Shown here in pieces: positions 2,376 through 43,613 of a stretch of DNA of 64,000 nucleotides. Where the stretch lies: the NCBI RefSeq assembly GCF_032444005.1, contig NC_091287.1:441812001-441876000 (forward strand), read 5' to 3'. Position numbers and translations under genes: made by a program. This stretch comes from Ranitomeya imitator (lineage: Eukaryota). The notes under the pieces were generated by a model. That model did not search any database. It was given only the letters and a program-made list of their open reading frames with translations, and had not been told where the DNA came from. How positions within the stretch are numbered: position 1 is the first letter of the stretch; each line of letters opens with the position of its first letter.

Positions 2376-2944
2376 TTAAAGGGAACCCGTCAGTTGATGC
2401 ATGCTGCCCAAACTCTGGGCAGCACGAATCAGCCACTGGCTGTAGTATATCCCAGCCATGTAAGTTTGTCTCTGAAAAGCTGNNNNNNNNNNNNNNNNNN
2501 NNNNNNNNNNNNNNNNNNNNNNNNNNNNNNNNNNNNNNNNNNNNNNNNNNNNNNNNNNNNNNNNNNNNNNNNNNNNNNNNNNNNNNNNNNNNNNNNNNNN
2601 NNNNNNNNNNNNNNNNNNNNNNNNNNNNNNNNNNNNCTGTAGGTGTGTTAACATATAGGCGGGTCTTCAGTGGTTTCTCCCCGCCCACTGACAGTGACTG
2701 ACAAGCCTCTACCTATATGCGCACAAAGACAGAAGCTTGCCAGTCACGGTCAGCGGTGGAGAAAAGCCACCAGGGACCCCTCACCTGTACGACTAGTGCA
2801 CACTGCGACTCGGTCACCGGTGGCTATTAAAAGTATGTTTTTCTCTGAAAGACCACAGCATAACCTACATGGCAGAGACTCTACAGTGGCTGATACAGGT
2901 TACCCACAGTTTGGAGCAAGTATCGGCTGACAGGTTCCCCTTAT
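2376..2944. mobile_element. T2/Kolobok-type palindromic MITE spanning the assembly gap
   Basis: Starts ttaa|agggaacccgtca and ends tgacaggttcccct|ta. Confidence 0.65.
2483..2636. other. Assembly gap (154 N)
   Basis: Run of N. Confidence 1.
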
Positions 2945-5265: not shown

Positions 5266-5412
5266 CAAGAATTTCTTCATAGTCTACAAGATCAAACCAC
5301 ACGACGGCAACAGATGTCCAAACCCCGAGCAGAGCAATAACCATGAACCAGGTGAAGAAGGAGCTGCCGGACAGGCCTTCCTTTTTCCCATTTTTACCAC
5401 CATGTTTTTGGT
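5266..5412 (-). CDS. ASPH: ASPH exon 2 (cytosolic tail and transmembrane helix)
   Basis: Pyrimidine tract and ccaacag acceptor, g|gtaag donor, 147 nt, phase 1-1. Translates (D)QKHGGKNGKKEGLSGSSFFTWFMVIALLGVWTSVAVVWFDLVDYEEIL, near-identical to the ASPH/junctin TM region. Confidence 0.97.
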
Positions 5413-7478
5413 CTGTTGGAAAAGAATAGAGTAAGAAAAAAAATTGTTAGAACAGGAACACACGATAAAAAGACTTCATATGGTTTATTTTTTTAGAAGA
5501 GCGACAGCACGACTCTTCAGGATCTGGATCACCTTGCTCAATGACTTATCATAGCATTACCCATCTCTTATAGTCTAATAGTCTATAGTAATGTTGTACC
5601 TTGCTTGTATTAGACCTACAATAAATTGTGTAACCGGCTGAATGAACTCGGCACGAAGGGATGCAAAATATATGGAATCCCTTCCAAAAATAAATGGCAA
5701 ATTTCATTTTAAGTGGAAGTATTAAAATGAACATATGATATCTATAAAGAACAGGCCCAATTCACTGGGTGTACATAAAGACCAAAAAAACGCACCCTGA
5801 CAGGCAGGAAACATTTTATGTACAGTCCCAGACCACTCTTGACCCCAAAGAAGGGTGAAGAAGCTCCAATGTCAAATCAGTTTAAAAATAGAGAGGAAAG
5901 GCTCAGGGATGAGCACAACCGTTTCGCAGTGACGGCTCCAGCAAGAGCCACAGACACCAATGATTTTCACAGTCTTGCGATCAATAATCAACAATAGCTT
6001 TGTGGCTTAAGTTTGTTTTTACAATAATAGTAAATGATTGATATATATATATATATAAATATATACACACACACAAAAAAAATTAAAAAAAATAAATAAA
6101 AAATCACCCTACATAAAAGCTGCTAATTTTAATCTCACATATGTATTTCAATGTTTCTAGAGGTTCTCAGACCTCACAATATGTCAGATAAAGCACAGAT
6201 CATGGGTGCTAACAATATACTGGATTATGCTATTTCCTGTTGTTATCAGCCAGAGCGGGTGACCGAAAAGTTACAAACGTAGAGCAGGCATAAAGAAGGC
6301 ATATAACATTAGGTTTAATATTCCTATTTATTCTAGGGTTGAAATATTAACAAGTGTACATTATTTTCTGGAAAGGCAGTAAAGATCACCATATGTGGCA
6401 GTAACACAGATCTCACAGAGGCCGGGCTGTCAACACGGAGAATTTTACTCTCAATACCACGCAAGCGAGTTCTGAGGACAAAGAAGTACTTTTGTCACAG
6501 ACAACTATAGCCGACAGCAACGTACCCTCTCACAGAAAATAACAAAATTCTGTAACCTTATACATTCCAACAGTTATTAGAAATAAAAACAGAGGGGGGG
6601 AAAAAAAAAACCAAAAAAAATATATATATAATTTACTTTATATATTTTTATACAAATAATAAAAACAACAACACTAACACGCACAATACATAGCGAAATT
6701 AATACAATATAAAAAATATATACCCTATATACAAGAGTATAAACCGACCCGAGTATAAGCCGAGGCACCTACTGGGTAAGCTTATTGACTCGAGTATAAG
6801 CCGGATATGCATTGTCCCCCTCATCCCTGTCCTACTATATGTGGCTCCCCCTGTCCTGGTATGGCTACGTTCACATTAGCGTTGCGTCGGGGGCAGCCCT
6901 ATATTTAACATGGGGGGGCGCATGGACATGCGTTGCTCTTGCGTTTTGTGACGCATGCGTCCCTATGGCGCAACCGTCAGGGCGCAGAGGACGCTGCATG
7001 ATGCAGTTTTTTCTGCGCCAAAAACCATGAAAAAATGAACGCATGCGACTCACAATGGCTAAACATCCGTTGAAGATTCTATCAATACTATTACAAACTG
7101 TATTTTCCCAAGGAGTGTAAAATACAAGAAAAACCTTGTATCCTTTCAGCCTAGAAAGCCCCTTAAATGCTGGCTATATCAGACTTCAGGTTAGACCGTG
7201 CATTGCAGCTTATTTTGTTGTAAAGCGGTGTTGTCCAGCGCTGAAAGTTTATAAGGGGCATCAGAAATTACCGATGTTCAACTGGGAAGCCTTAGGTTCG
7301 GTGCCCGTGGATGTTATGTGACACACACAGCCCACCTAAACATTTCTGCAGATCAAGAAAGCCCCCTTTCACCAATACCCATTACCCTCTGTTAGGAGAC
7401 TCATCAGGAGAATGCTTCCTGCCACACTGGAAAAGTTTTAAGGACTGGTTTGAAGATCATGAATCATCCTAACTGATA

Positions 7479-7988
7479 TTAAAGGGCTGAACCGAAACTA
7501 AAATGTATTTGAATCCTAAATGCCTAATTAAATATCATAATCTAATCTTTTTAATTACTTTAAATTAAAAAGTTATATTGCTCCTTCACTACTCTAACTG
7601 CTGTATTCATTTATTTTTTGACTACCGTACTTCTTCTTTGATAACACTTTGTTTGAGAATCCCAGTGCATGAAATCAGGGGGTATCAGTGATGTCCGTTT
7701 CAGGGTCTGAGCTAGTCCCTGTGTTACTGAGCATGCATCAATTGTGAATTCTGAGGAACGATCAGTAGGATCTTGTCAATAGTAACAGTGCACTCGCTCT
7801 GATAAGTAACAAGCCAGCAACAGAGTGCACTGTCAGCGCATGTTGTAAGAAGGATACTCTGTGTGTTAGAAAAGCAGAGACCAACACCTCCCCCACAAGT
7901 GAAGTGATGCACTGGGATTCTGAAACAAAGAGTCAAAGAGGAAGTAGTAAAAAAATAAAGCAGTTTGTGTAGTGAGGGAACCTTTTAA
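7479..7988. mobile_element. Degenerate T2-type fold-back MITE
   Basis: ttaaaggg start and ccttttaa end; inverted pair cttcttctttga...gaatcccagtgca / tgcactgggattc...tcaaagaggaag. Confidence 0.5.
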
Positions 7989-10711
7989 TTAAAGTATATC
8001 AGAAGAGAGTTTAAAGATGACAATAGATAGGCATTTAGGATTATATAAATTATAGTTTTCGGACCGACCCTTTAACCAAAGCAGAGAGACAACCGCAGCT
8101 CTCCAAATTCAGAATGATAGGAATTGCTTACTTTCACAAACATCTTTGTGTGAATTAGTGGTAAAGAATAAATTGCGCTTAAACATATTTGTACTCAGGA
8201 ACTTTGGCTGGCTCTGCTTATTTTCTTTGTTACACTTCATGCAGCCCAATCCTTCTCTCCTCAGAGTCACGAATGCAGATATGCAATGAGCTGGCACCGT
8301 GAACATGCAAGAATTACAAAGGGTGCAATCGCCATGAGGATATCCGCTTCATGCTGCAAATTTCAGGACATTTCACTTCACCAGTGAAAATTGTCTTATA
8401 TATTTCCTTTGTGCGTACATTCCCACATGGCATTTCAGCTGCAAAATTCCTTCCGTAGAAATGTCACCGCGCTAAATACTGCAGAAAATATTGACGCAAA
8501 ATTGGTTTGATAAAGTCGATATTTAGGTATACATCTTCCTCTGGCTAGGAGCTAAGCACTTATGATAAATGAGTATTCAGATGAAACAGCAGGGGCTCGC
8601 AGCTGCTACTTTCTCAGGTAACATATTTCCCTTCCTGTTTTATCACAGGAGCGAGTGTTTCTGCTGCATTGCCAGCCCTCTGAGCTCATCATAAATGACA
8701 TCATAAGCTCAATGGCCGCTGGATCACTGACTTGATTTAGGATGACCCGAGCTGGAGACGTGGCAAAAACACTGGCTCCTGTGATAAAACAGGCAAGCAA
8801 AGGTGCTACCTCAAAAAGCAGCAGCTTGTGAGCCGCTGTTTAGTCTGTTTACTCACTTTTAAGGGACTTATACTTCCTCCCCTGCCCAGAAGCTGTAGTA
8901 TATATCAATCATGTACTGCAGCGCATGATCAGGCAAAGCAGGGGCACATGTATTCACTTATCTCAGCACAGGAATTTATTTATTTTTTTTTTTGTTTACA
9001 CACCCAATAGTGGAACTTATTATTATTCAGATCTATCGATTAAAATGTACTTGGTTCATAAGACAACCCCATGAATTACATTTGCTTATTATGGTGCAAG
9101 CGGGCAAAGACGTGACAAATGTATCTGGATAAAGTATCACGAGTGAAGAAACAAAAAATTACTCAACTTCTTACAAAAATGTGCCAGCCAGTAAGCACAG
9201 ACACAAAAAGGTCAGGTTTTTTATTTCTTCGACCCTTGACTTTATAAAGAATTGTTTCGGCGCGGTGTATTTTGCTGACTGATGGAGAACGCTCTGCTTT
9301 CATGATGCTATTTTGACATAAGCAGCCAATCTGCCAGCAAATGTAACATCAGAAGACGCCGTTCTAATTTTAATTTTCTTCCTAGTCCCATTAAAAAAAA
9401 ACAAAAAAACAAGGATGATGCGATATAGATCGAGAAGATCAAAATCATCTAATTTTCAAAGTCTTTGATCAGCAGAACTGAGGATTCAATCTAAAGACCC
9501 AAATAGAAGACGACACCATTCGGAGGAGCAAGTTATGGAGAGCCTTCCACGTGGAGCGCCAGCTATGCATGGGAATGTGCCCCAAGGCTCGACCTGTACC
9601 CTCATGTAAAAACAAGAAAGCAATAGGAGATATCAAATGAACTAAAACAGTTGTGGCTTGTGTGACTGGAGAAGAGCGGGGGCCCATAGGTGGCCATCGG
9701 CCACCAAACCTTTAACCTATAGATTTATGGACTGCAGACTGTTTATTCTAACTTTATCTTCTCGGATCCTCGATATAAAGCCAGTTTGATGGACTACGTA
9801 GCACACAACATAACTGGCTGGAGTGCTCTTCCTCCAAGCCTGGCTGGTAACCTAACCACTTATATGAGGTTATAGATCTATAGTACCTGTATCCTCCATC
9901 ATGCTGTCAGCTTTCTTCACCCACGAACATCAGCCAAATAAATTGTTCCAGAAAATCACTCTGCTTCTTCTGACTGATAAAACCCAAGACGAGACCCAGT
10001 GTCCCCCATCCGGCAGGGGTGGAATGGCTCTGCACAGTTAAGTCAGCTGGATTCCGAAACTAGACCTGCCCAGCAAAGCTGCTGAATATCTATTATTAGT
10101 CCTGCCTTCCAAAGCCAAACTCTTGCAGGCACTCATATGGAAATCCTGGGCTATGGAACAAGTGCTCTGCACAGCCTTAACTCCTTCATGGCCACAGACA
10201 AAGGCGAAGTCCTAGGAGACGGCGACATCAAGCGAGAGCACGCCACTGTAGTGCACACACCTTGCAGCAGACGATGACAGACCCGGTCAATCAGCTCTGC
10301 ACCATATAATCCATAACTATTTGGAGAGGGAATTAGAGCGGGCTGCAGGACAGCTGGCTCCAGACCACAGATTCCAGCAATCCATTTACTGGGAAAGAGC
10401 ATCGATTAAGCAGCAGCCGTGGCAGAATCTGCCCAGAATTAAACGCTCTGCTGGCATTTTATTTTGCCAGTCTAAACAATCAATCAACAATGAAAGATAT
10501 AAAAGGGAAATACAGCCAGACGTCTAGATTTCAACCAATGCAGCAGATATAGTTGTTCTGGCTTAGAACTGGAAGTCCAGTACTAGGGCCATCAATATCA
10601 AATTGGTGGGGGTTTGATACCTGGCAGCGAAGAGCCACAGTGCCGGCTGGATATAAACTGTATACAAAGCTGGAACAGCAGAGCTCTGCGCACCGTGTAG
10701 AGGACATTCTC

Positions 10712-11090
10712 AATAATTATTATTATTATTATAATAGTAATGGCCTTCAGCTTGATCTCGAGCCATGGCAACTTGATGGATGAATCCTCTGTAGGAAGAT
10801 CGCTCTTGTGCAAGCCTTGATAGGTCCACCAGGGCCACCCCAGCCGTTATCTTGAGTCTATCAAGACATCCGTTTGCTAGTCTTCATCTTCACCTTGTTC
10901 CTTCTACTCTTCCGTCCATGATGTCCTTCTCCAGTAATTAGACATCATAAGAGAGCAAAGTAGGCAAGTTGTAGCTTAGTAATCCTTTGCTTTGAGTGAC
11001 ATGTCTGGCTTGATCTGTTCCAAAATTGATTTGCTTGTTCTTCTTGCCATCCATGGTATTGATAACATCCTTCTCCAGCACCACACCTCA
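10712..11090 (-). mobile_element. RTE-clade LINE 3' fragment
   Basis: Minus-strand translation gives VWCWRRMLSIPWMARRTSKSILEQIKPDMSL and LEKDIMDGRVEGTR, typical of the RTE C-terminus; (TAA)n tail at ~10712-10740. Confidence 0.8.
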
Positions 11091-11659
11091 CAGTAGACTG
11101 ATGTGAATGGGAGCTGAGCTACAGTATGTAAGATCAGTACTGGCTCTGCCAGGATGTGTGCAGTCAGTGGTATTGTGCATCTGTCCTACTCATTAGAATA
11201 GGATTGGTGCACAAAATCCGACAGCTGCTGTGCACATCCAGCAAGGCACCTTTCAACACAATGTCATCCGACCCTTCCATCTCTGAATGCAAAAGTGAGA
11301 GGTGTCAGAGAACCCAATAAATATAGATGCACAAGATACCTAGCTGAAAGTGCTGCTTACTGGCATATGAGGTGTCCACTACCTGTCAAAGAACCAGAAT
11401 GATCAGGACACTTCGTCACAGGGATGCGCCCTGAGGGGACGTTTCCCAACATGACTGTTCATATTTATTATTACCGTAAGTTTTCTATTACGTGTCAGCA
11501 TTGTGGAAATCTTAAAAAAAAAAAAAAAAGTGTTGCTGGGAACCTAGGCCCATAGGAGTAACCAGAGGCTTGCAGAAAAAAAAAAAAATTATAGAAACTT
11601 GATTCCAGCTCACCCAGTTGCTCTATGGTCATCCACCTGAGGCTCAGACACCGGCCTCG

Positions 11660-11833
11660 CCCTGGCCTCACATCAAGGAAAATAGATACAAATTGGAGTC
11701 CGGCTCAACACGACTGGATTTTCCTTTTCTTTTTCAAAAGAAAATATAGTGCATACAAAAGAAAATATTTACATGGTCGACATGACCCAGTCAACGCGCT
11801 TCGACTGCACTAGGCAGTCCTACTCATGAGTAA
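11660..11833 (-). mobile_element. Penelope-like pLTR fragment with a degenerate hammerhead motif
   Basis: Minus strand reads CTCATGA GTAG GACTGC-ctagt-GCAGTC GAAG CGCGTTG: a perfect 6-bp stem II with mutated CUGANGA and GAAA boxes and the Penelope-type CGCG palindrome. Confidence 0.55.
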
Positions 11834-12281
11834 TGTAGAGGAGCTGCGGAGACACCATCACGTGTTTCTCAACGCAGGCAGTGAATAGCCAGGCCTTTCC
11901 CCGGTAAGGAACAACCAAGGGAAGGGCAGCATCCAATAAAGGAAAACATCCACTAAAGGAAAACCACCTATGCCAAGCATGGTATCCATCCACAGACAGC
12001 TGTTTCAGGGTTTTTGCCCCTCATCAGTGTGAAGTAGGAAACTGGCTATCAGGAGCAGTGCCTAGTAGAAAGTCTATAAAGGCACGGATGATTGACCTCG
12101 TTGAGACCAAAACATCCAACACCGCGGAGACACCATCACGTGTTTCTCAACGCAGTGATCCAGAAGACTGCCCCCAAATATGCAAATGCATGTAGAGAAG
12201 CTGCGGAGACACCATCACGTGTTTCTCAACGCAGGCAGTGAATAGCCAGGCCTTTCCCCGGGAAGGAACAACCAAGGGAAG
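11834..12281 (-). repeat. ~1.25 units of a 357-bp hammerhead-bearing repeat (satellite-2 / non-LTR retrozyme type)
   Basis: gctgcggagacaccatcacgtgtttctcaacgcaggcagtgaatagccaggcc at 11843 and 12200; third core copy at ~12124; octamer ATGCAAAT at 12180-12187; hammerhead inside. Confidence 0.8.
11989..12033 (-). ncRNA. Type I minimal hammerhead ribozyme
   Basis: UUCACA CUGAUGA GGGG-caaaaa-CCCU GAA ACAGCUGU C/ UGUGGA: full catalytic core, 6-bp stem I, 4-bp stem II, palindromic stem III, GUC cleavage triplet. Confidence 0.85.
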
Positions 12282-13029
12282 TTGCGGCGCTCATTCGAAT
12301 CCGGTTTCTTCCTAGCAAACTGACCCTTGGTTGGTTCTACAGGTGGATATTAGAATATTCATCTTTAGGGCTCGTGCACACAAGAGTATACCGTATATAC
12401 TCGAGTATAAGCCGAGATTTTCAGCCCATTTTTTGTGGCTGAAAGTCCCCCTCTCAGCTTATACTCGAGTCATACCCAGAGGTCGGCAGGGGAGGGGGAG
12501 CAGGGGCTGTCTAATTATACTCACCTACTCCTGGCGCGGTCCCTGTATGTCCCTTGTTCCCCGGCAGCTTCTTCCTGTACTGAGCGATCACATGGTACCG
12601 CTCATTACAGTAATGAATATGTGGCTCCACCTCCCATAGGGGTGGAGCCGCATATTCATTACTGTAATGAGCGGTAACGGTGAGCGCTCAGTACAGGAAG
12701 AAGCTGCCGGCGCCAGGGAAGCCAGCCAGGGACAGCGCCAGGAGCAGGTGAGTATAACGGGGAGGGGGAGCGCTGAGCTGCGCGATATTCACCTGCTCCT
12801 CGTTCCAGCCGCCGCTCTGTCTTCAGCACTGACGCTCAGGTCAGAGGGCGCGGTGACGTGGTTAGTGCGCGCTCTCTGCCTGACCATCAGTGAAGATGGA
12901 GCGGTGCCGGAACGAAGTCAGGTGAATATTGAAAGTGCCGGGGGCCTGAGCGACGGAGAGGTGAGTATGTGATTTTTTTTTTTTTATCGCAGCAACAGCA
13001 AATGGGGCAAGTGTCTGTATGGAGCATCT

Positions 13030-13380
13030 TATGGGGCCATAACGTTTGTGCAGCACTATATGGGGCCATAACGTTTGTGCGGCACTATATGGGGCCATAA
13101 CGTTTGTGCGGCACTATATGGGGCCATAACGTTTGTGCAGCACTATATGGGGCCATAACGTTTGTGCAGCACTATATGGGGCCATAACGTTTGTGCAGCA
13201 CTATATGGGGCCATAACGTTTGTGCAGCACTATATGGGGCCATAACGTTTGTGCAGCACTATATGGGGCCATAACGTTTGTGCAGCATTATATGGGGCCA
13301 TAACGTTTGTGCAGCACTAAATGGGGCCATAATGTTTGTGCAGCATTATATGGGGCCATAACGTTTGTGCAGCATTATAT
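13030..13380. repeat. 29-bp minisatellite inside the Tc2-like element
   Basis: About 12 copies of atatggggccataacgtttgtgcagcact. Confidence 0.9.
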
Positions 13381-13439
13381 TGGGCAAATGTCTGTATGGA
13401 GCTCTATGGAGCATCTTACGGGGCCATTATTAACCTTTA

Positions 13440-34492: not shown

Positions 34493-35432
34493 ATAAACAA
34501 AACATCAGCAAAAAATACCAAAGATAAATGCTGGCGACTCAAATCATAATCATATATAAAGGAGAACTAAGAGTCCAAAAATAGCCAAAATTACGTATGT
34601 TCAATCATAAACTATATTTATTGATAATTTATACAACTGTACAACAACATTAACATTTAAAAACGTACCACTTATGTAATATTATGTGATAATTCCGTGG
34701 ATACATCAAAAAAACAAAGATCATAGATCAGAACTCTGCCCGGTATACCTATAGGTAACATGCAGCTAATGTGCTATAATAGCAAGTGCTGAGCTACTGA
34801 TTGGCCATGGCATTCAGACTGTCCATCAGAGTAAATGTGTGCAATGACAGAGAATGTTTAATAACAGCTATGCCACCCGGCCGATCATGCGCTCAAGATG
34901 GTAACATTAAAACAGTACAATCCAGGTTGTATTACCCATAGTAGATGTGGCAGGTCCTGTCCTGGTCCTTGTGTGGCTACCCCAACGCGCGTTTCGCGTA
35001 TGGTGAATACCGCTTCCTCAGGAAGACGCGAAACGCGCGTTGGGGTAGCCACACAAGGACCAGGACAGGACCTGCCACATCTACTATGGGTAATACAACC
35101 TGGATTGTACTGTTTTAATGTTACCATCTTGAGCGCATGATCGGCAGGGTGGCATAGCTGTTATTAAACATTCTCTGTCATTGCACACATTTTCTCTGAT
35201 GGACAGTCTGAATGCCATGGCCAATCAGTAGCTCAGCACTTGCTATTATAGCACATTAGCTGCATGTTACCTATAGGTATACCGGGCAGAGTTCTGATCT
35301 ATGATCTTTGTTTTTTTGATGTATCCACGGAATTATCACATAATATTACATAAGTGGTACGTTTTTAAATGTTAATGTTGTTGTACAGTTGTATAAATTA
35401 TCAATAAATATAGTTTATGATTGAACATACGT
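34493..35432. mobile_element. Penelope-like inverted pLTR insertion (846-bp fold-back plus tail)
   Basis: 410-bp arms at 34590-34999 and 35026-35435 with about 2 mismatches and a 26-nt spacer; 14-bp direct repeat aatcaccaatatct at 34479-34492 and 35433-35446; ACGCGTTTCG...CTTCCTCAGG-type motif. Confidence 0.85.
34980..35025 (-). ncRNA. Minimal Penelope-type hammerhead ribozyme motif
   Basis: CUUC CUGAGGA A GCGGUAU-ucacc-AUACGC GAA ACGCGCGU U/ GGGG. Stem I is weak (2 GC + 2 GU) and the cleavage triplet is GUU. Confidence 0.65.
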
Positions 35433-39870: not shown

Positions 39871-40714
39871 TTCCAAAGCGATCAATAAAAAAAGAAAAAC
39901 CAAGACACCAAGATTTAGGAGTCAGATGCCAATGTCTATTCACAGTGACTGCTGGGAGTTGTCCTGCAATCATTAATCTGAGATCACTGTTCTGCAAATT
40001 CCTGATGTCCTTTCACTTAGTAACAACGATCACCGCCCCAAAGGCAGCTCAGCTAGAAATGTTGTAGTCAGGACCGGCTGAACTCAGCTTCTTGTGACAT
40101 CAAAAAAGGTGCAGAAGAAAGTCACAACTCACTGAAAGCCCCGACAGTCAGGGGTATGACTGTAGAGGATGCAGGGATAGTCACATCTGAGCCTAAAAAA
40201 GTCCCATATGAGAAGACCAACACTATTTAAGACCCATGATATCAGAGGTTGGACATTTTGCATTGTGGACCACGAGCTTCAAGTTACACCTCTGATGGCA
40301 AGGGTGTAGTTATAGTAGGTAGGTACAGGGGGGTGGGGGGGTTGAGGTGACATGTGGGTCCTGAAGCAGAAAAGGTCCCATATGAGAAGAAGATCAATAC
40401 TATTAAAGACCTATGATACCTGCAGTTGAAAATCTAGCATGAGATTGGTTCACAGAGCAAAAATTAGACTGATCCCCACCTACTGACAAAAACCAACAAC
40501 AGTGGCACAAGCACCAGGAATCTGAGGTGGGGTTAGGGGCGGCATCTATCGGAGCTCACAGATAGCAGAAAAATGCCATCTTGTGACTCCCAGGTGGGCC
40601 CTCACCCTCTGGGCCCTATAGCAGCTGCTACAGTTACACCAGTGACATTTACAATGCGACTCATTCATTTCCAACAGGCAATCACAGAGGAGCATGCAAC
40701 CTAAGAAATTGTGG

Positions 40715-43305
40715 CGGGCGACCTGGGAACGGGTGAGCGATCTGGCACGCTGGCAACCTGGGAACGGTCCGAGAGATGTGGGTACGCGGGCGGCCTGGGA
40801 ACGGGCGAGAGATCTGGCACGCGGGCAGCCTGGGAACGGGCGAGAGATCTGGCACGCGGGCGGCTTGGGAACGAGCGAGAGATCTGGCACGCGGGCGGCT
40901 TGGGAACGAGCGAGAGATCTGGCACGCGGGCGGCTTGGGAACGGGCGAGAGATCTGGCACGCGGGCGACCTGGGAACGGGCGAGAGATCTGGCACGCAGG
41001 CGGCCTGGGGACGGGCGAGAGATCTGGCACGCGGGTGACCTGGGGACGGGCGAGAGATCTGGCACGCGGGTGACCTGGGGACGGGCGAGAGATCTGGCAC
41101 GCGGGCGACCTGGGAACGGGCGAGAGATCTGGCACGCAGGCGGCCTGGGGACGGGCGAGAGATCTGGCACGCGGGTGACCTGGGGACGGGCGAGAGATCT
41201 GGCACGCGGGCGACCTGGGGACGGGCAAGAGATCTGGCACGAGATCTGGCACGCGGGTGACCTGGGAACGGGCGAGAGATCTGGCACGCGGGCGGCTTGG
41301 GAACGAGCGAGAGATCTGGCACGCGGGCGGCTTGGGAACGAGCGAGAGATCTGGCACGCGGGCGGCTTGGGAACGAGCGAGAGATCTGGCACGCGGGCGG
41401 CTTGGGAACGGGCGAGAGATCTGGCACGCAGGCGACCTGGGAACGGGCGAGAGATCTGGCACGCGGGCGACCTGGGAACGGGCGAGAGATCTGGCACGCA
41501 GGCGGCCTGGGGACGGGCGAGAGATCTGGCACGCGGGCGACCTGGGGACGGGCGAGAGATCTGGCACGCGGGCGACCTGGGGACGGGCAAGAGATCTGGC
41601 ACGAGATCTGGCACGCGGGTGACCTGGGAACGGGCGAGAGATCTGGCACGCGGGCGACCTGGGAACAAGCGAGATATCTGGCACGCGGGCGACGGGCAAG
41701 AGATCTGGCACGCGGGCGACCTGGGGACGGGCGCGAGATCTGGCACGCGGGCGACCTGGGCACGGGCGAGAGATCTGGCACGCAGGCGACCTGGGCACGG
41801 GCGAGAGATCTGGCACGCGGGCGACCTGGGCACGGGCGAGAGATCTGGCACGCGGGCGAGAGATCTGGCACGCGGGCGACCTGGGCACGGGCGAGAGATC
41901 TGGCACGCGGGCGACCTGGGCACGGGCGAGAGATCTGGCACGCGGGCGACCTGGGCACGGGCGAGAGATCTGGCACGCGGGCGACCTGGGCACGGGCGAG
42001 AGATCTGGCACGCGGGCGACCTGGGCACGGGCGAGAGATCTGGCACGCGGGCGACCTGGGCACGGGCGAGAGATCTGGCACGCGGGCGACCTGGGCACGG
42101 GCGAGAGATCTGGCACGCGGGCGACCTGGGCACGGGCGAGAGATCTGGCACGCGGGCGACCTGGGCACGGGCGAGAGATCTGGCACGCGGGCGACCTGGG
42201 CACGGGCGAGAGATCTGGCACGCGGGCGACCTGGGCACGGGCGAGAGATCTGGCACGCGGGCGACCTGGGCACGGGCGAGAGATCTGGCACGCGGGCGAC
42301 CTGGGCACGGGCGAGAGATCTGGCACGCGGGCGACCTGGGCACGGGGGAGAGATCTGACATGCGGGCGACCTGGGCACGGGCGAGAGATCTGGCACGTGG
42401 GCGACAGATCTGGCATGCGGGCGACCTGGGCACGGGCGAGAGATCTGGCATGCGGGCGACCTGGGAACGGGGGAGAGATCTGGCATGCGGGCGACCTGGG
42501 CACGGGCGAGAGATCTGGCACGCGGGCGACCTGGGCACGGGGGAGAGATCTGGCATGCGGGCGACCTGGGAACAGGGGAGAGATCTGGCATGCGGGCGAC
42601 CTGGGCACGGGGGAGAGATCTGACATGCGGGCGACCTGGGCACGGGCGAGAGATCTGGCACGTGGGCGACAGATCTGGCATGCGGGCGACCTGGGCACGG
42701 GCGAGAGATCTGGCATGCGGGCGACCTGGGAACAGGGGAGAGATCTGGCATGCGGGCGACCTGGGCACGGGCGAGAGATCTGGCACGCGGGCGACCTGGG
42801 CACGGGGGAGAGATCTGACATGCGGGCGACCTGGGCACGGGCGAGAGATCTGACACACGGGCGACCTGGGCACGGGTGAGAGATCTGACATGCGGGCGAC
42901 CTGGGCACGGGTGAGAGATCTGACATGCGGGCGACCTGGGCACGGGCGAGAGATCTGGCACGTGGGCGACAGATCTGGCATGCGGGCGACCTGGGCACGG
43001 GCGAGAGATCTGGCATGCGGGCGACCTGGGAACAGGGGAGAGATCTGGCATGCGGGCGACCTGGGCACGGGCGAGAGATCTGGCATGCGGGCGACCTGGG
43101 CACGGGCGAGAGATCTGGCATGCGGGCGACCTGGGAACAGGGGAGAGATCTGGCACGCGGGCGACCTGGGCACGGGGGAGAGATCTGACATGCGGGCGAC
43201 CTGGGAACGGGGGAGAGATCTGACATGCGGGCGACCTGGGCACGGGTGAGAGATCTGACATGCGGGCGACCTGGGCACGGGTGAGAGATCTGGCATGCGG
43301 GCGAG
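40715..43305. repeat. 35-bp CpG-rich VNTR (~74 units) at the start of ASPH intron 1
   Basis: Unit gggcgacctgggcacgggcgagagatctggcacgc, with variant blocks. Confidence 0.97.
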
Positions 43306-43579
43306 CAGTCCCAGACATGACCCCACACTACAGGTTTATGGGGACGATAACCTATAACTGCTCCAAGATTGCACGGAGAAGCTGCTGCCATCGCCTGATA
43401 CCGAGGACACCGGCACCGCTCCGCCAGCATCACCCATGTGGCTCAGTCAGTGAGACGGGAGAACTACTCTTCCCATCATGCCCTGCTGCACACAACATCA
43501 TGGAGATTTTGCTGTTGCCAAAAATCAGAACATTCCACTGCCAGGTCAAAGTTCAGCCCCGAGCACTGGGAACACTGAC

Positions 43580-43613
43580 CTTTCCTCACTGGTTTGCTTC
43601 TCTTTGGAGCCAT
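43580..43613 (-). CDS. ASPH: Probable ASPH exon 1 coding part, MAPKRSKPVRK(D)
   Basis: aatcATGG is a strong Kozak context. AAAG|gtcagt donor after 34 nt is phase 1 and joins exon 2 in frame (G|AC = Asp). Basic MAP-K/R start resembles vertebrate ASPH N-termini; lies directly below the CpG promoter. Confidence 0.72.

What the first reader, a model, noticed from the sequence alone, without database searches (positions are those of the whole stretch)
11834..12281. Retrozyme/satellite-2-type repeat with an intact hammerhead ribozyme, sense to the ASPH pre-mRNA
Seen: the minus strand at 12033-11989 has every hammerhead core base (CUGAUGA, GAAA, GUC), 6-bp stem I, 4-bp stem II (one G-U) and palindromic stem III ACAGCUGU. 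It sits in a 357-bp repeat unit that carries an octamer ATGCAAAT. Established: amphibian satellite 2 and metazoan non-LTR retrozymes are short tandem units with minimal type I hammerheads that cleave as dimers via the stem III palindrome and give circular RNAs. Inference: ASPH transcription would copy this ribozyme into intron 1, allowing intron cleavage between 11995 and 11994. Only one intact hammerhead is present, so cis activity may be low.
Basis: partly seen in the sequence, partly recalled or inferred. Interest (0 to 1): 0.85.

Follow-up and report, generated by a model that had tools for sequence, protein, structure and literature searches.

The report
Solo frog retrozyme copy with hammerhead
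This is a single, slightly decayed 1.26-unit copy of a very abundant frog "retrozyme" repeat, carrying a sequence-complete hammerhead ribozyme and lying in sense inside ASPH intron 1; the kind is already described in amphibians.

Summary
The minus strand at 12033-11989 carries a complete type I hammerhead. It has the CUGAUGA, GAA and A15.1/U16.1 core, C17, a 6-bp stem I, a 4-bp stem II and the palindrome ACAGCUGU as stem III. None of 300 random 64-kb windows gave such a motif.

It lies in a 449-bp element (11833-12281) made of 1.26 head-to-tail units of 357 bp. That stretch is massively repeated in sequencing runs of several related organisms, while the flank at 12282-12374 is not covered at all.

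The family's majority form has G-C where this copy has G-U, in stem I and in stem II. Stems I and II covary strongly in 78 distinct hammerheads from metagenome contigs that share the same core and stem III.

ASPH exon 1 (43613-43580) and exon 2 (5412-5266) lie on the minus strand, so the ribozyme is sense in intron 1.

Rfam thresholds are not reached: HH9 scores 18.6 bits. The octamer is at chance level and there is no target-site duplication. The monomer's best fold is inactive; only a dimer gives the double hammerhead, and this locus has one ribozyme.

This is an ordinary solo copy of an amphibian non-LTR retrozyme. The scan has already noted this class many times on other DNA of this genome, including a 357-nt family. 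Interest is low.

The parts
11833..12281 (-). Whole retrozyme-type insertion: 1.26 head-to-tail units of a 357-bp non-coding repeat, laid out as R - unique part - R
   Evidence: A direct repeat spaced 357 bp apart. Word depth in DNA run X1 is about 4e5 to 1.4e6 across 11848-12281, against 2e4 to 5e4 in 11600-11816 and 0 in 12282-12374. No other copy lies in the window.
12190..12281 (-). 5' copy (on the RNA strand) of the 92-nt terminal redundancy
   Evidence: family D2: 98% identical to 11833-11924.
11833..11924 (-). 3' copy of the 92-nt terminal redundancy
   Evidence: It differs from the 5' copy at 11841 and 11905. At 11905 the family majority agrees with the other copy.
11989..12033 (-). 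Type I hammerhead: stem I 12033-12028 with 11994-11989, CUGAUGA 12027-12021, stem II/loop 2 12020-12007, GAA 12006-12004, helix III palindrome 12003-11996, C17 at 11995
   Evidence: Sub-threshold HH9 alignment. The dimer's best fold is the double hammerhead. Stems I and II covary in hammerheads of the same architecture.
11994..11995 (-). Predicted self-cleavage site, 3' of C17 (11995) and before U1.1 (11994)
   Evidence: Position follows from hammerhead numbering applied. Cleavage itself was not tested.
11930..11964 (.). 17-bp tandem duplication (2.1 copies) inside the unit; many family contigs carry a single copy
   Evidence: TRF. Joints 12281 to 11955 with 12-13 letters between them in X1 (table 5c).
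12124..12155 (.). 32-nt internal repeat holding CACGTG; the other copies lie inside the 92-nt R at 12203-12234 and 11846-11877
   Evidence: family D3: three copies, 100% identical.
12180..12187 (+). Octamer ATGCAAAT, at chance level
   Evidence: 5 in the window against 5.48 expected.
43580..43613 (-). ASPH exon 1 coding part (MAPKRSKPVRK + 1 nt), with donor GTCAGT at 43579
5266..5412 (-). ASPH exon 2 (transmembrane exon, ...KHGGKNGKKEGLSGSSFFTWFMVIALLGVW...), with acceptor AG at 5414-5413 and donor GT at 5265-5264
   Evidence: The reading phase fits exon 1.

Best explanation
The stretch 11833-12281 is one dispersed, non-autonomous copy of an amphibian non-LTR retrozyme. Its family is a non-coding unit of about 357 nt whose RNA carries a canonical type I hammerhead with a very short, palindromic helix III.

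In the family's life cycle (established for axolotl and newts, inferred here), tandem units are transcribed and pairs of hammerheads form a double hammerhead through the helix III palindrome. They cut out unit-length RNA, a host ligase circularises it, and a Penelope-like reverse transcriptase copies it back into DNA.

This copy is longer than one unit and runs uninterrupted across the cleavage site. Its template was therefore a circular or multimeric RNA, copied for 1.26 turns (inference).

At this locus there is a single ribozyme, so no unit-length or circular RNA can be released. The copy lies in sense in ASPH intron 1 and is carried in the pre-mRNA. Its hammerhead folds into an inactive alternative as a monomer, and it has drifted by two C-to-U changes in stems I and II. 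Cleavage of the intron is therefore expected to be slow or absent and without consequence for ASPH. It is a relic, not a device.
For: - Motif and stems are complete and far beyond chance for a 64-kb window.
- The element is 1.26 head-to-tail units.
- 11848-12281 is repeated at a depth 10-70 times that of the already repetitive left flank, while the right flank has none, in run X1. It is also held by runs labelled with eight different organism codes.
- Near-identical contigs span the R-to-hammerhead part: X8 record 29, 189 nt with 3 differences.
- The family majority has C where this copy has U at 12007 and 12032 on the RNA strand. The family ribozyme therefore has all Watson-Crick stems, and this copy is decaying.
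- Contigs that match only 11988-12029 and diverge beyond it show the same ribozyme module in other repeat families (tables 5 and 7).
- 78 distinct hammerheads were selected only by the core and ACAGCUGU, leaving stems I and II free. In them, 87% of cells pair against 23-41% in slid controls, and all 10 pairs show double-sided changes.
- Five of eight contigs sampled from that set hold a motif that passes Rfam Hammerhead_1.
- The dimer's best fold is the double hammerhead, -31.1 kcal/mol against 2 x -12.1. The monomer's best fold pairs CUG with CAG and is inactive.
- The circular 357-nt monomer is unusually stable, z = -3.0.
- Literature: amphibian retrozymes of 330-350 nt have weak helix III, cleave poorly as monomers (22% in 1 h) and well as dimers, and give circular RNAs (PMC7229834). 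Vertebrate retrozymes are relatives of Penelope pLTRs; monomers are dispersed and 44% of Xenopus copies overlap introns (10.64898/2026.07.22.740005).
Against: - Rfam gathering scores are not reached: the best is HH9 at 18.6 bits against 52, and Hammerhead_1 is not listed.
- No target-site duplication was found.
- No run holds this very locus, so neither transcription nor cleavage could be observed.
- Tandem arrays of this exact family were not seen by me. They are only reported in an unchecked scan note.
- Eight of nine Xenopus retrozyme dimers did not cleave in vitro (10.64898/2026.07.22.740005). A complete motif therefore does not guarantee activity even for the family.
Confidence: 0.83

Rival explanations
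1. The intronic hammerhead is active in the ASPH pre-mRNA. It would act weakly as a monomer, or as a trans double hammerhead with abundant retrozyme RNAs of the same family. It would cut intron 1 about 6.6 kb before exon 2 and so lower or modulate ASPH expression from the upstream promoter.
For: The core is complete and in sense orientation. The palindromic helix III plus trans stem I would allow pairing with any family transcript, and the dimer is 6.9 kcal/mol better than two monomers. The family is extremely abundant as DNA. Axolotl monomers do cleave a little (PMC7229834).
Against: There is a single ribozyme and the monomer's best fold is inactive. The two stem changes include G10.1-U11.1. 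The hammerhead is not better preserved than the rest of the copy: 2 changes in 45 nt against at least 4 in about 390 nt. No RNA evidence was obtained. From my own knowledge of ribozyme-in-intron experiments, slow cleavage inside an intron usually does not impair splicing.
Confidence: 0.07
2. The element is a fragment of a Penelope-like element's terminal repeat (pLTR) rather than a retrozyme proper.
For: A degenerate minimal hammerhead-like motif (CUCAUGAG ... GAAGCGCGUU) starts 3 nt after the element's 3' end, at 11830-11790 on the minus strand, inside another repeat family whose contigs show inverted joints. Retrozymes and pLTRs are phylogenetically intermingled in Xenopus (10.64898/2026.07.22.740005).
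Against: ORFs were listed over 6-20 kb: none of 90 aa or more touches the element's left side (6,000-11,832), and the longest in the range is 244 aa. These ORFs were not scanned against protein families. The ribozyme has the extended stem I with an internal loop and the CAAAAA loop 2 of canonical type I hammerheads, aligning end to end with HH9, whereas PLE hammerheads are minimal (PMC6155905). The unit is head-to-tail and about 357 bp long, like retrozymes.
Confidence: 0.08
3. The hammerhead-like motif is a chance arrangement inside an ordinary repeat with no ribozyme history.
For: Rfam thresholds are not met. In a multi-gigabase genome some chance motifs must exist. The bare three-box pattern occurs in 27% of shuffled windows.
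Against: With stems required, 0 of 300 random windows gave a hit. The family majority improves both stems to Watson-Crick pairs. The architecture is the same as in covarying hammerheads that pass Rfam, down to stem lengths, loop size and helix III. The same module is shared by other repeat families.
Confidence: 0.02

Closest known systems
Axolotl non-LTR retrozyme Rtz_353 with HHR_Amex2 (Cervera and de la Pena 2020, PMC7229834)
   Same: A non-coding unit of about 350 nt. [quoted passage not shown] Poor activity expected as a monomer and the active fold as a dimer. Very high copy number.
   Different: Different host order (frog rather than salamander). Stem II here is four G-C/G-U pairs without the U-U mismatch described for Amex2. 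This locus holds 1.26 units with one ribozyme, not a tandem array. No sequence comparison was possible with the tools.
Newt satellite 2 hammerhead (Epstein and Gall 1987; Forster et al. 1988, as cited in PMC7229834)
   Same: An amphibian repeat of about 330 bp with a type I hammerhead. The double-hammerhead mechanism works through a palindromic helix III.
   Different: Newt helix III is a single pair with a tetraloop. Satellite 2 is organised in arrays with its own promoter. The octamer here is at chance level.
Xenopus non-LTR retrozyme families / REP4 (Li, Clavereau and Pollet 2026 preprint)
   Same: Frog retrozymes with an average consensus of 316 bp in Amphibia. Dispersed monomers are common, many are intronic, and they are related to PLE pLTRs.
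   Different: That study reports depletion from introns after normalisation. It found that only 1 of 9 tested dimers cleaved. The poison-frog family here was not compared with theirs.
Amniote intronic hammerhead HH9 in RECK (Rfam RF02275)
   Same: Intronic and in sense. Type I with the same loop 2 (CAAAAA) and a UAC internal loop on the 5' side of stem I. It is the best Rfam alignment.
   Different: HH9 has a stable helix III and is conserved at one orthologous locus across amniotes. The element here scores 18.6 bits against a cut-off of 52, is one copy of a mobile family, and shows drift.
Minimal hammerheads of Penelope-like elements (PMC6155905)
   Same: Weak or palindromic helix III and action as dimers. 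They share a genome with retrozymes, and two degenerate examples lie in this window.
   Different: PLE hammerheads lack the extended stem I and loop contacts and sit next to an RT/GIY-YIG ORF. Neither is the case here.

Membership tests
Hammerhead ribozyme, type I | Conserved core: C3-U4-G5-A6-N7-G8-A9, G12-A13-A14, A15.1-U16.1, and H17 not G | tested here: met
   All are present at 12027-12021, 12006-12004, 12003/11996 and C at 11995.
Hammerhead ribozyme, type I | Helices I and II flanking the core, open end at helix I | tested here: met
   A 6-bp stem I and a 4-bp stem II, each with one G-U. The same helices covary in 78 hammerheads of the same architecture. The family majority is all Watson-Crick.
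Hammerhead ribozyme, type I | Helix III able to close the three-way junction | tested here: inconclusive
   As a monomer there are only 2 bp plus an AGCU loop, and the best fold is an inactive alternative. As a dimer an 8-bp intermolecular helix III forms and the double hammerhead is the best fold.
Hammerhead ribozyme, type I | Rfam gathering score (RF00163 34 bits; RF02275 52 bits) | tested here: not met
   No hit at gathering or at E <= 10 in 1.1 kb. HH9 scores 18.6 bits on a 71-nt slice. Contigs with the same core and helix III score 35-43 bits on RF00163. The shortfall probably comes from this copy's stem sequences; this is my inference and was not computed.
Hammerhead ribozyme, type I | Site-specific self-cleavage giving 5'-OH and 2',3'-cyclic phosphate ends | not testable with these tools
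   All the runs laid were contigs, which cannot show RNA ends.
Metazoan non-LTR retrozyme | Non-coding unit of about 150-450 bp carrying a canonical type I hammerhead | tested here: met
   A 357-bp unit. The only ORF of 90 aa or more that touches it starts at 12331, outside the element. The extended stem I and loop 2 resemble HH9.
Metazoan non-LTR retrozyme | Head-to-tail tandem organisation with a hammerhead in each unit | tested here: not met
   At this locus there are 1.26 units and one hammerhead. Head-to-tail continuity is visible (R-U-R). Arrays of a 357-nt family elsewhere in the genome are known only from an unchecked scan note.
Metazoan non-LTR retrozyme | Multicopy, dispersed family | tested here: met
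   Very high summed depth confined to 11848-12281 in four runs. Eight organism codes hold part of it.
Metazoan non-LTR retrozyme | Highly structured unit-length RNA found as linear and circular molecules | tested here: inconclusive
   The predicted circular monomer has z = -3.0 against shuffles. Expression and circularity could not be tested, because 'RNA?' is only a guess for the runs.
Penelope-like element pLTR | Minimal hammerhead next to an RT plus GIY-YIG ORF | tested here: not met
   ORFs were listed over 6-20 kb: none of 90 aa or more lies between 6,000 and 11,832, and the longest in the range is 244 aa. They were not scanned against protein families. The hammerhead is canonical rather than minimal.
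Domesticated intronic hammerhead (HH9/HH10 type) | Orthologous conservation of the ribozyme at one gene locus across species | tested here: inconclusive
   No run covers the unique flank 12282-12374, so no orthologous locus could be examined. Within the copy, the hammerhead has drifted at least as much as the rest.

The most novel reading that the evidence does not exclude
Abundant retrozyme RNAs of the same family pair in trans with this single sense-strand hammerhead, through the 8-nt helix III palindrome and the swapped stem I. They would cut ASPH intron 1 co-transcriptionally. Expression of a mobile-element RNA would then tune output from the upstream ASPH promoter relative to any downstream promoter.
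Probability: 0.03. Interest if true: 0.6.

Novelty: new member of a known kind. Interest (0 to 1): 0.14.

Why it matters
It matters little by itself. It adds one clean example of a dispersed copy longer than one unit. That shape argues for a circular or multimeric RNA template in retrozyme retrotransposition. It also shows a sense-oriented hammerhead tolerated in a long first intron.

Its practical use is as a natural test case. The copy has private variants that would let locus-specific RNA ends be told apart from the family background. One could therefore ask whether a lone amphibian hammerhead ever cleaves in a host pre-mRNA.

The comparative set built here may be reused. It holds 78 hammerheads sharing the ACAGCUGU helix III, with covarying stems I and II. 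It shows that G10.1-U11.1 is a recurrent variant, most simply explained by CpG decay (12 of 78).

Tried and rejected
- Rfam at gathering thresholds on the whole window, and at E <= 10 on 1.1 kb, gave no hammerhead. Only a 71-nt slice gave a sub-threshold HH9 alignment.
- A single-strand fold of 66 nt is not more stable than shuffles, z = -0.66. This is uninformative for a dimer-dependent motif.
- Target-site duplication: there is no shared word longer than 5 nt next to the ends. No word of 8 nt or more from the right flank occurs within 9000-11832. The idea of a chimeric insertion together with the left-hand repeat is therefore unsupported.
- The 24-nt, 75% inverted match of the element's start at 12324-12347 (I5) is at chance level for a 3-kb region and has no read depth. 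I did not count it as an inverted arm.
- The octamer as a promoter element is at chance frequency.
- An exact search for the frog hammerhead (33 nt) in metagenome contigs found nothing.
- Both sequencing-run searches found only partial holders, with a share of 0.46 or less. No run is on record as RNA, so expression, RNA ends, and insertion polymorphism or orthology could not be addressed.
- The joint 12281 to 11955 is not proof of tandem arrays. It is explained by contigs that carry one copy of the 17-bp duplication and align to either R copy.
- Searches of the scan's notes by sequence and by several words came back blank.
- I did not build a covariance model from alignment A1. Its core and helix III were fixed by the search pattern taken from this very motif, so a hit would be circular.

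Full report
**1. The observation**

Read on the minus strand, 12033-11989 is a complete type I hammerhead.
- Stem I is UUCACA (12033-12028).
- CUGAUGA lies at 12027-12021.
- Stem II is GGGG, loop CAAAAA, CCCU (12020-12007).
- GAA lies at 12006-12004.
- ACAGCUGU lies at 12003-11996, with A15.1 and U16.1 at its ends.
- C17 is at 11995, followed by UGUGGA (11994-11989), which closes stem I.

Stems I and II each hold one G-U pair. A loose three-box pattern is not rare: 27 of 100 shuffles of the window have one. A scanner that also demands the helices found this site only. It found none in 300 random 64-kb windows, and nothing more when relaxed.

The motif lies between two 92-nt direct repeats, 11833-11924 and 12190-12281. 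They are 98% identical and start 357 bp apart. The element is therefore 1.26 head-to-tail units, and the window has no other copy. The octamer at 12180-12187 is at chance level, 5 found against 5.5 expected.

**2. Gene context**

The ASPH transmembrane exon is on the minus strand at 5412-5266, behind a polypyrimidine tract and a CAG. An ATG at 43613 opens MAPKRSKPVRK and is followed at 43579 by GTCAGT. The two exons join in phase. The location of exon 1 was a lead from scan note s1-295400, which I checked.

Intron 1 is thus 43579-5413. The hammerhead is sense to the pre-mRNA, 31.5 kb after the donor and 6.6 kb before the acceptor. Transcripts from any alternative promoter downstream of 11.8 kb would not contain it. 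I did not look for one.

**3. Family evidence**

No sequencing run holds this locus. Many hold part of the unit, under eight coded organism labels.

I laid contigs of four runs on 11600-12500 at 80% likeness. Summed depth is enormous and confined to 11848-12281. It is lower by a factor of 10-70 in the left flank, which is a different repeat ending at about 11830. It is zero in 12282-12374 and high again from 12389, which is a third repeat. The element's edges are therefore real.

Contigs nearly identical to the window cross from the 3' R into the hammerhead: X8 record 29, 189 nt with 3 differences.

Nearly all contigs differ from the window at 12007 and 12032. On the RNA strand the family has C where this copy has U. 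The family's stems I and II are thus fully Watson-Crick, and this copy shows two transitions, the one at 12007 in a CpG. There are at least four further fixed differences outside the hammerhead. The ribozyme is therefore no better kept than the rest.

Some contigs match only 11988-12029 and run on into unlike sequence. Some carry that piece twice. The ribozyme module is thus shared by other repeat families.

**4. Independent test of the fold**

I scanned metagenome contigs with only the core and helix III fixed (CTGATGA, 10-18 free letters, GAAACAGCTGTC). This returned at least 120 contigs, presumably host DNA. In 58 of 123 motifs the unconstrained flanks form exactly six contiguous pairs. In 80 of 123 the free segment closes with four or five pairs.

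I aligned 78 distinct 49-mers with a 14-nt stem II/loop, one of them the window's own motif and 77 from the contigs.
- 87% of cells pair, against 23-41% when partners are slid by one to three columns.
- All ten pairs show changes on both sides.
- The covariation score is 0.51, against 0.05-0.11 in slid controls. None of 500 shuffles reached the observed value.
- G10.1-U11.1, the variant of this copy, occurs in 12 of the 78.

Five of eight such contigs hold a motif that passes Rfam Hammerhead_1, at 35-43 bits against a threshold of 34. The window's own motif does not reach any Rfam threshold. Its best alignment is HH9 at 18.6 bits, end to end, sharing loop 2 CAAAAA and the UAC internal loop of stem I. 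I attribute the shortfall to its unusual stem II (G-C where the model expects C-G) and the two G-U pairs. That is an inference.

**5. Mechanism**

As a monomer, the best fold pairs C3-U4-G5 with the CAG of helix III and is inactive. Two molecules give the classical double hammerhead as the best fold. It has an 8-bp intermolecular helix III and swapped stems I, at -31.1 kcal/mol against 2 x -12.1. For the family majority the figures are -38.5 against 2 x -16.5.

The unit-length RNA, folded as a circle, is more stable than 199 of 200 dinucleotide shuffles, z = -3.0.

This matches published amphibian retrozymes:
- Units are 330-350 nt with a helix III of one or two pairs plus a tetraloop.
- Monomers cleave 22% in one hour, dimers cleave efficiently, and linear and circular RNAs occur in all tissues (PMC7229834).
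- Retrozymes are relatives of Penelope pLTRs, dispersed monomers are common, and 44% of Xenopus copies overlap introns (preprint 10.64898/2026.07.22.740005).
- The same preprint warns that eight of nine Xenopus dimers did not cleave in vitro.

Because this copy exceeds one unit and is continuous across the cleavage site, its template was circular or multimeric (inference). With one ribozyme it cannot release a unit-length RNA.

**6. What it is not**

- ORFs were listed over 6-20 kb: none of 90 aa or more lies between 6,000 and 11,832, and the longest in the range is 244 aa. They were not scanned against protein families.
- There is no target-site duplication.
- Nothing suggests domestication.
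- A degenerate minimal hammerhead-like motif begins 3 nt beyond the element, at 11830-11790 on the minus strand. It belongs to the neighbouring repeat. Whether the two arrived together is open.

**7. Comparison and verdict**

The element works like, and by its testable features belongs to, the amphibian non-LTR retrozymes. At this locus it fails the tandem-array criterion and is a solo derivative.

The scan has already recorded this class many times on other DNA of what its notes call a poison-frog genome. One note reports a 357-nt monomer family in 2.07 tandem copies. These notes are unchecked by me.

The finding is real and correctly interpreted, but ordinary.

Noticed in passing
window 11790-11830 (minus strand), within a repeat spanning at least 11600-11830: A degenerate minimal hammerhead-like motif starts 3 nt after the retrozyme copy. 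It reads CUCAUGAG (G5 replaced by C), a 6-bp hairpin GACUGC/GCAGUC, then GAAGCGCGUU. The surrounding repeat ends sharply at about 11830 in many contigs, and its family shows 'opposite strands' joints. A second decayed motif, CUUGAUGUGAGGCC...GGCCGGUGUC, lies near 11676-11640.
   Followed up: partly
window 34992-35021 (minus strand): A Penelope-type minimal hammerhead-like motif, CUGAGGA ... GAAACGCGCGUU, with the palindromic helix III ACGCGCGU. It sits at the centre of the palindrome flagged by another note. It is also sense to ASPH intron 1. Its palindrome differs from ACAGCUGU, so no heterodimer with the 12033-11989 ribozyme is expected.
   Followed up: partly
window 12389-12500 and 12515-12757: Another very abundant short repeat with an internal inverted repeat lies at 12399-12470. 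It is followed by nested long inverted repeats of 31-36 nt arms, 94-97% complementary (I1-I3). Both look like MITE-type elements.
   Followed up: no
window 13030-13385: A 29-bp minisatellite of 12.3 copies, 96% matches.
   Followed up: no
window 40546-43433: A CpG-rich VNTR gives spurious ORFs of about 900 aa in three frames on the minus strand, just inside ASPH intron 1.
   Followed up: no
loci L001-L120 (metagenome contigs): At least 120 metagenome contigs carry type I hammerheads with the same helix III, ACAGCUGU. About a fifth have a direct copy and about a quarter an inverted copy of the surrounding 270 nt nearby. They are presumably host retrozyme or PLE DNA in host-associated metagenomes. 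The hosts were not identified.
   Followed up: partly
window 2483-2636: A run of 154 N, either an assembly gap or masked. I left it untouched.
   Followed up: no
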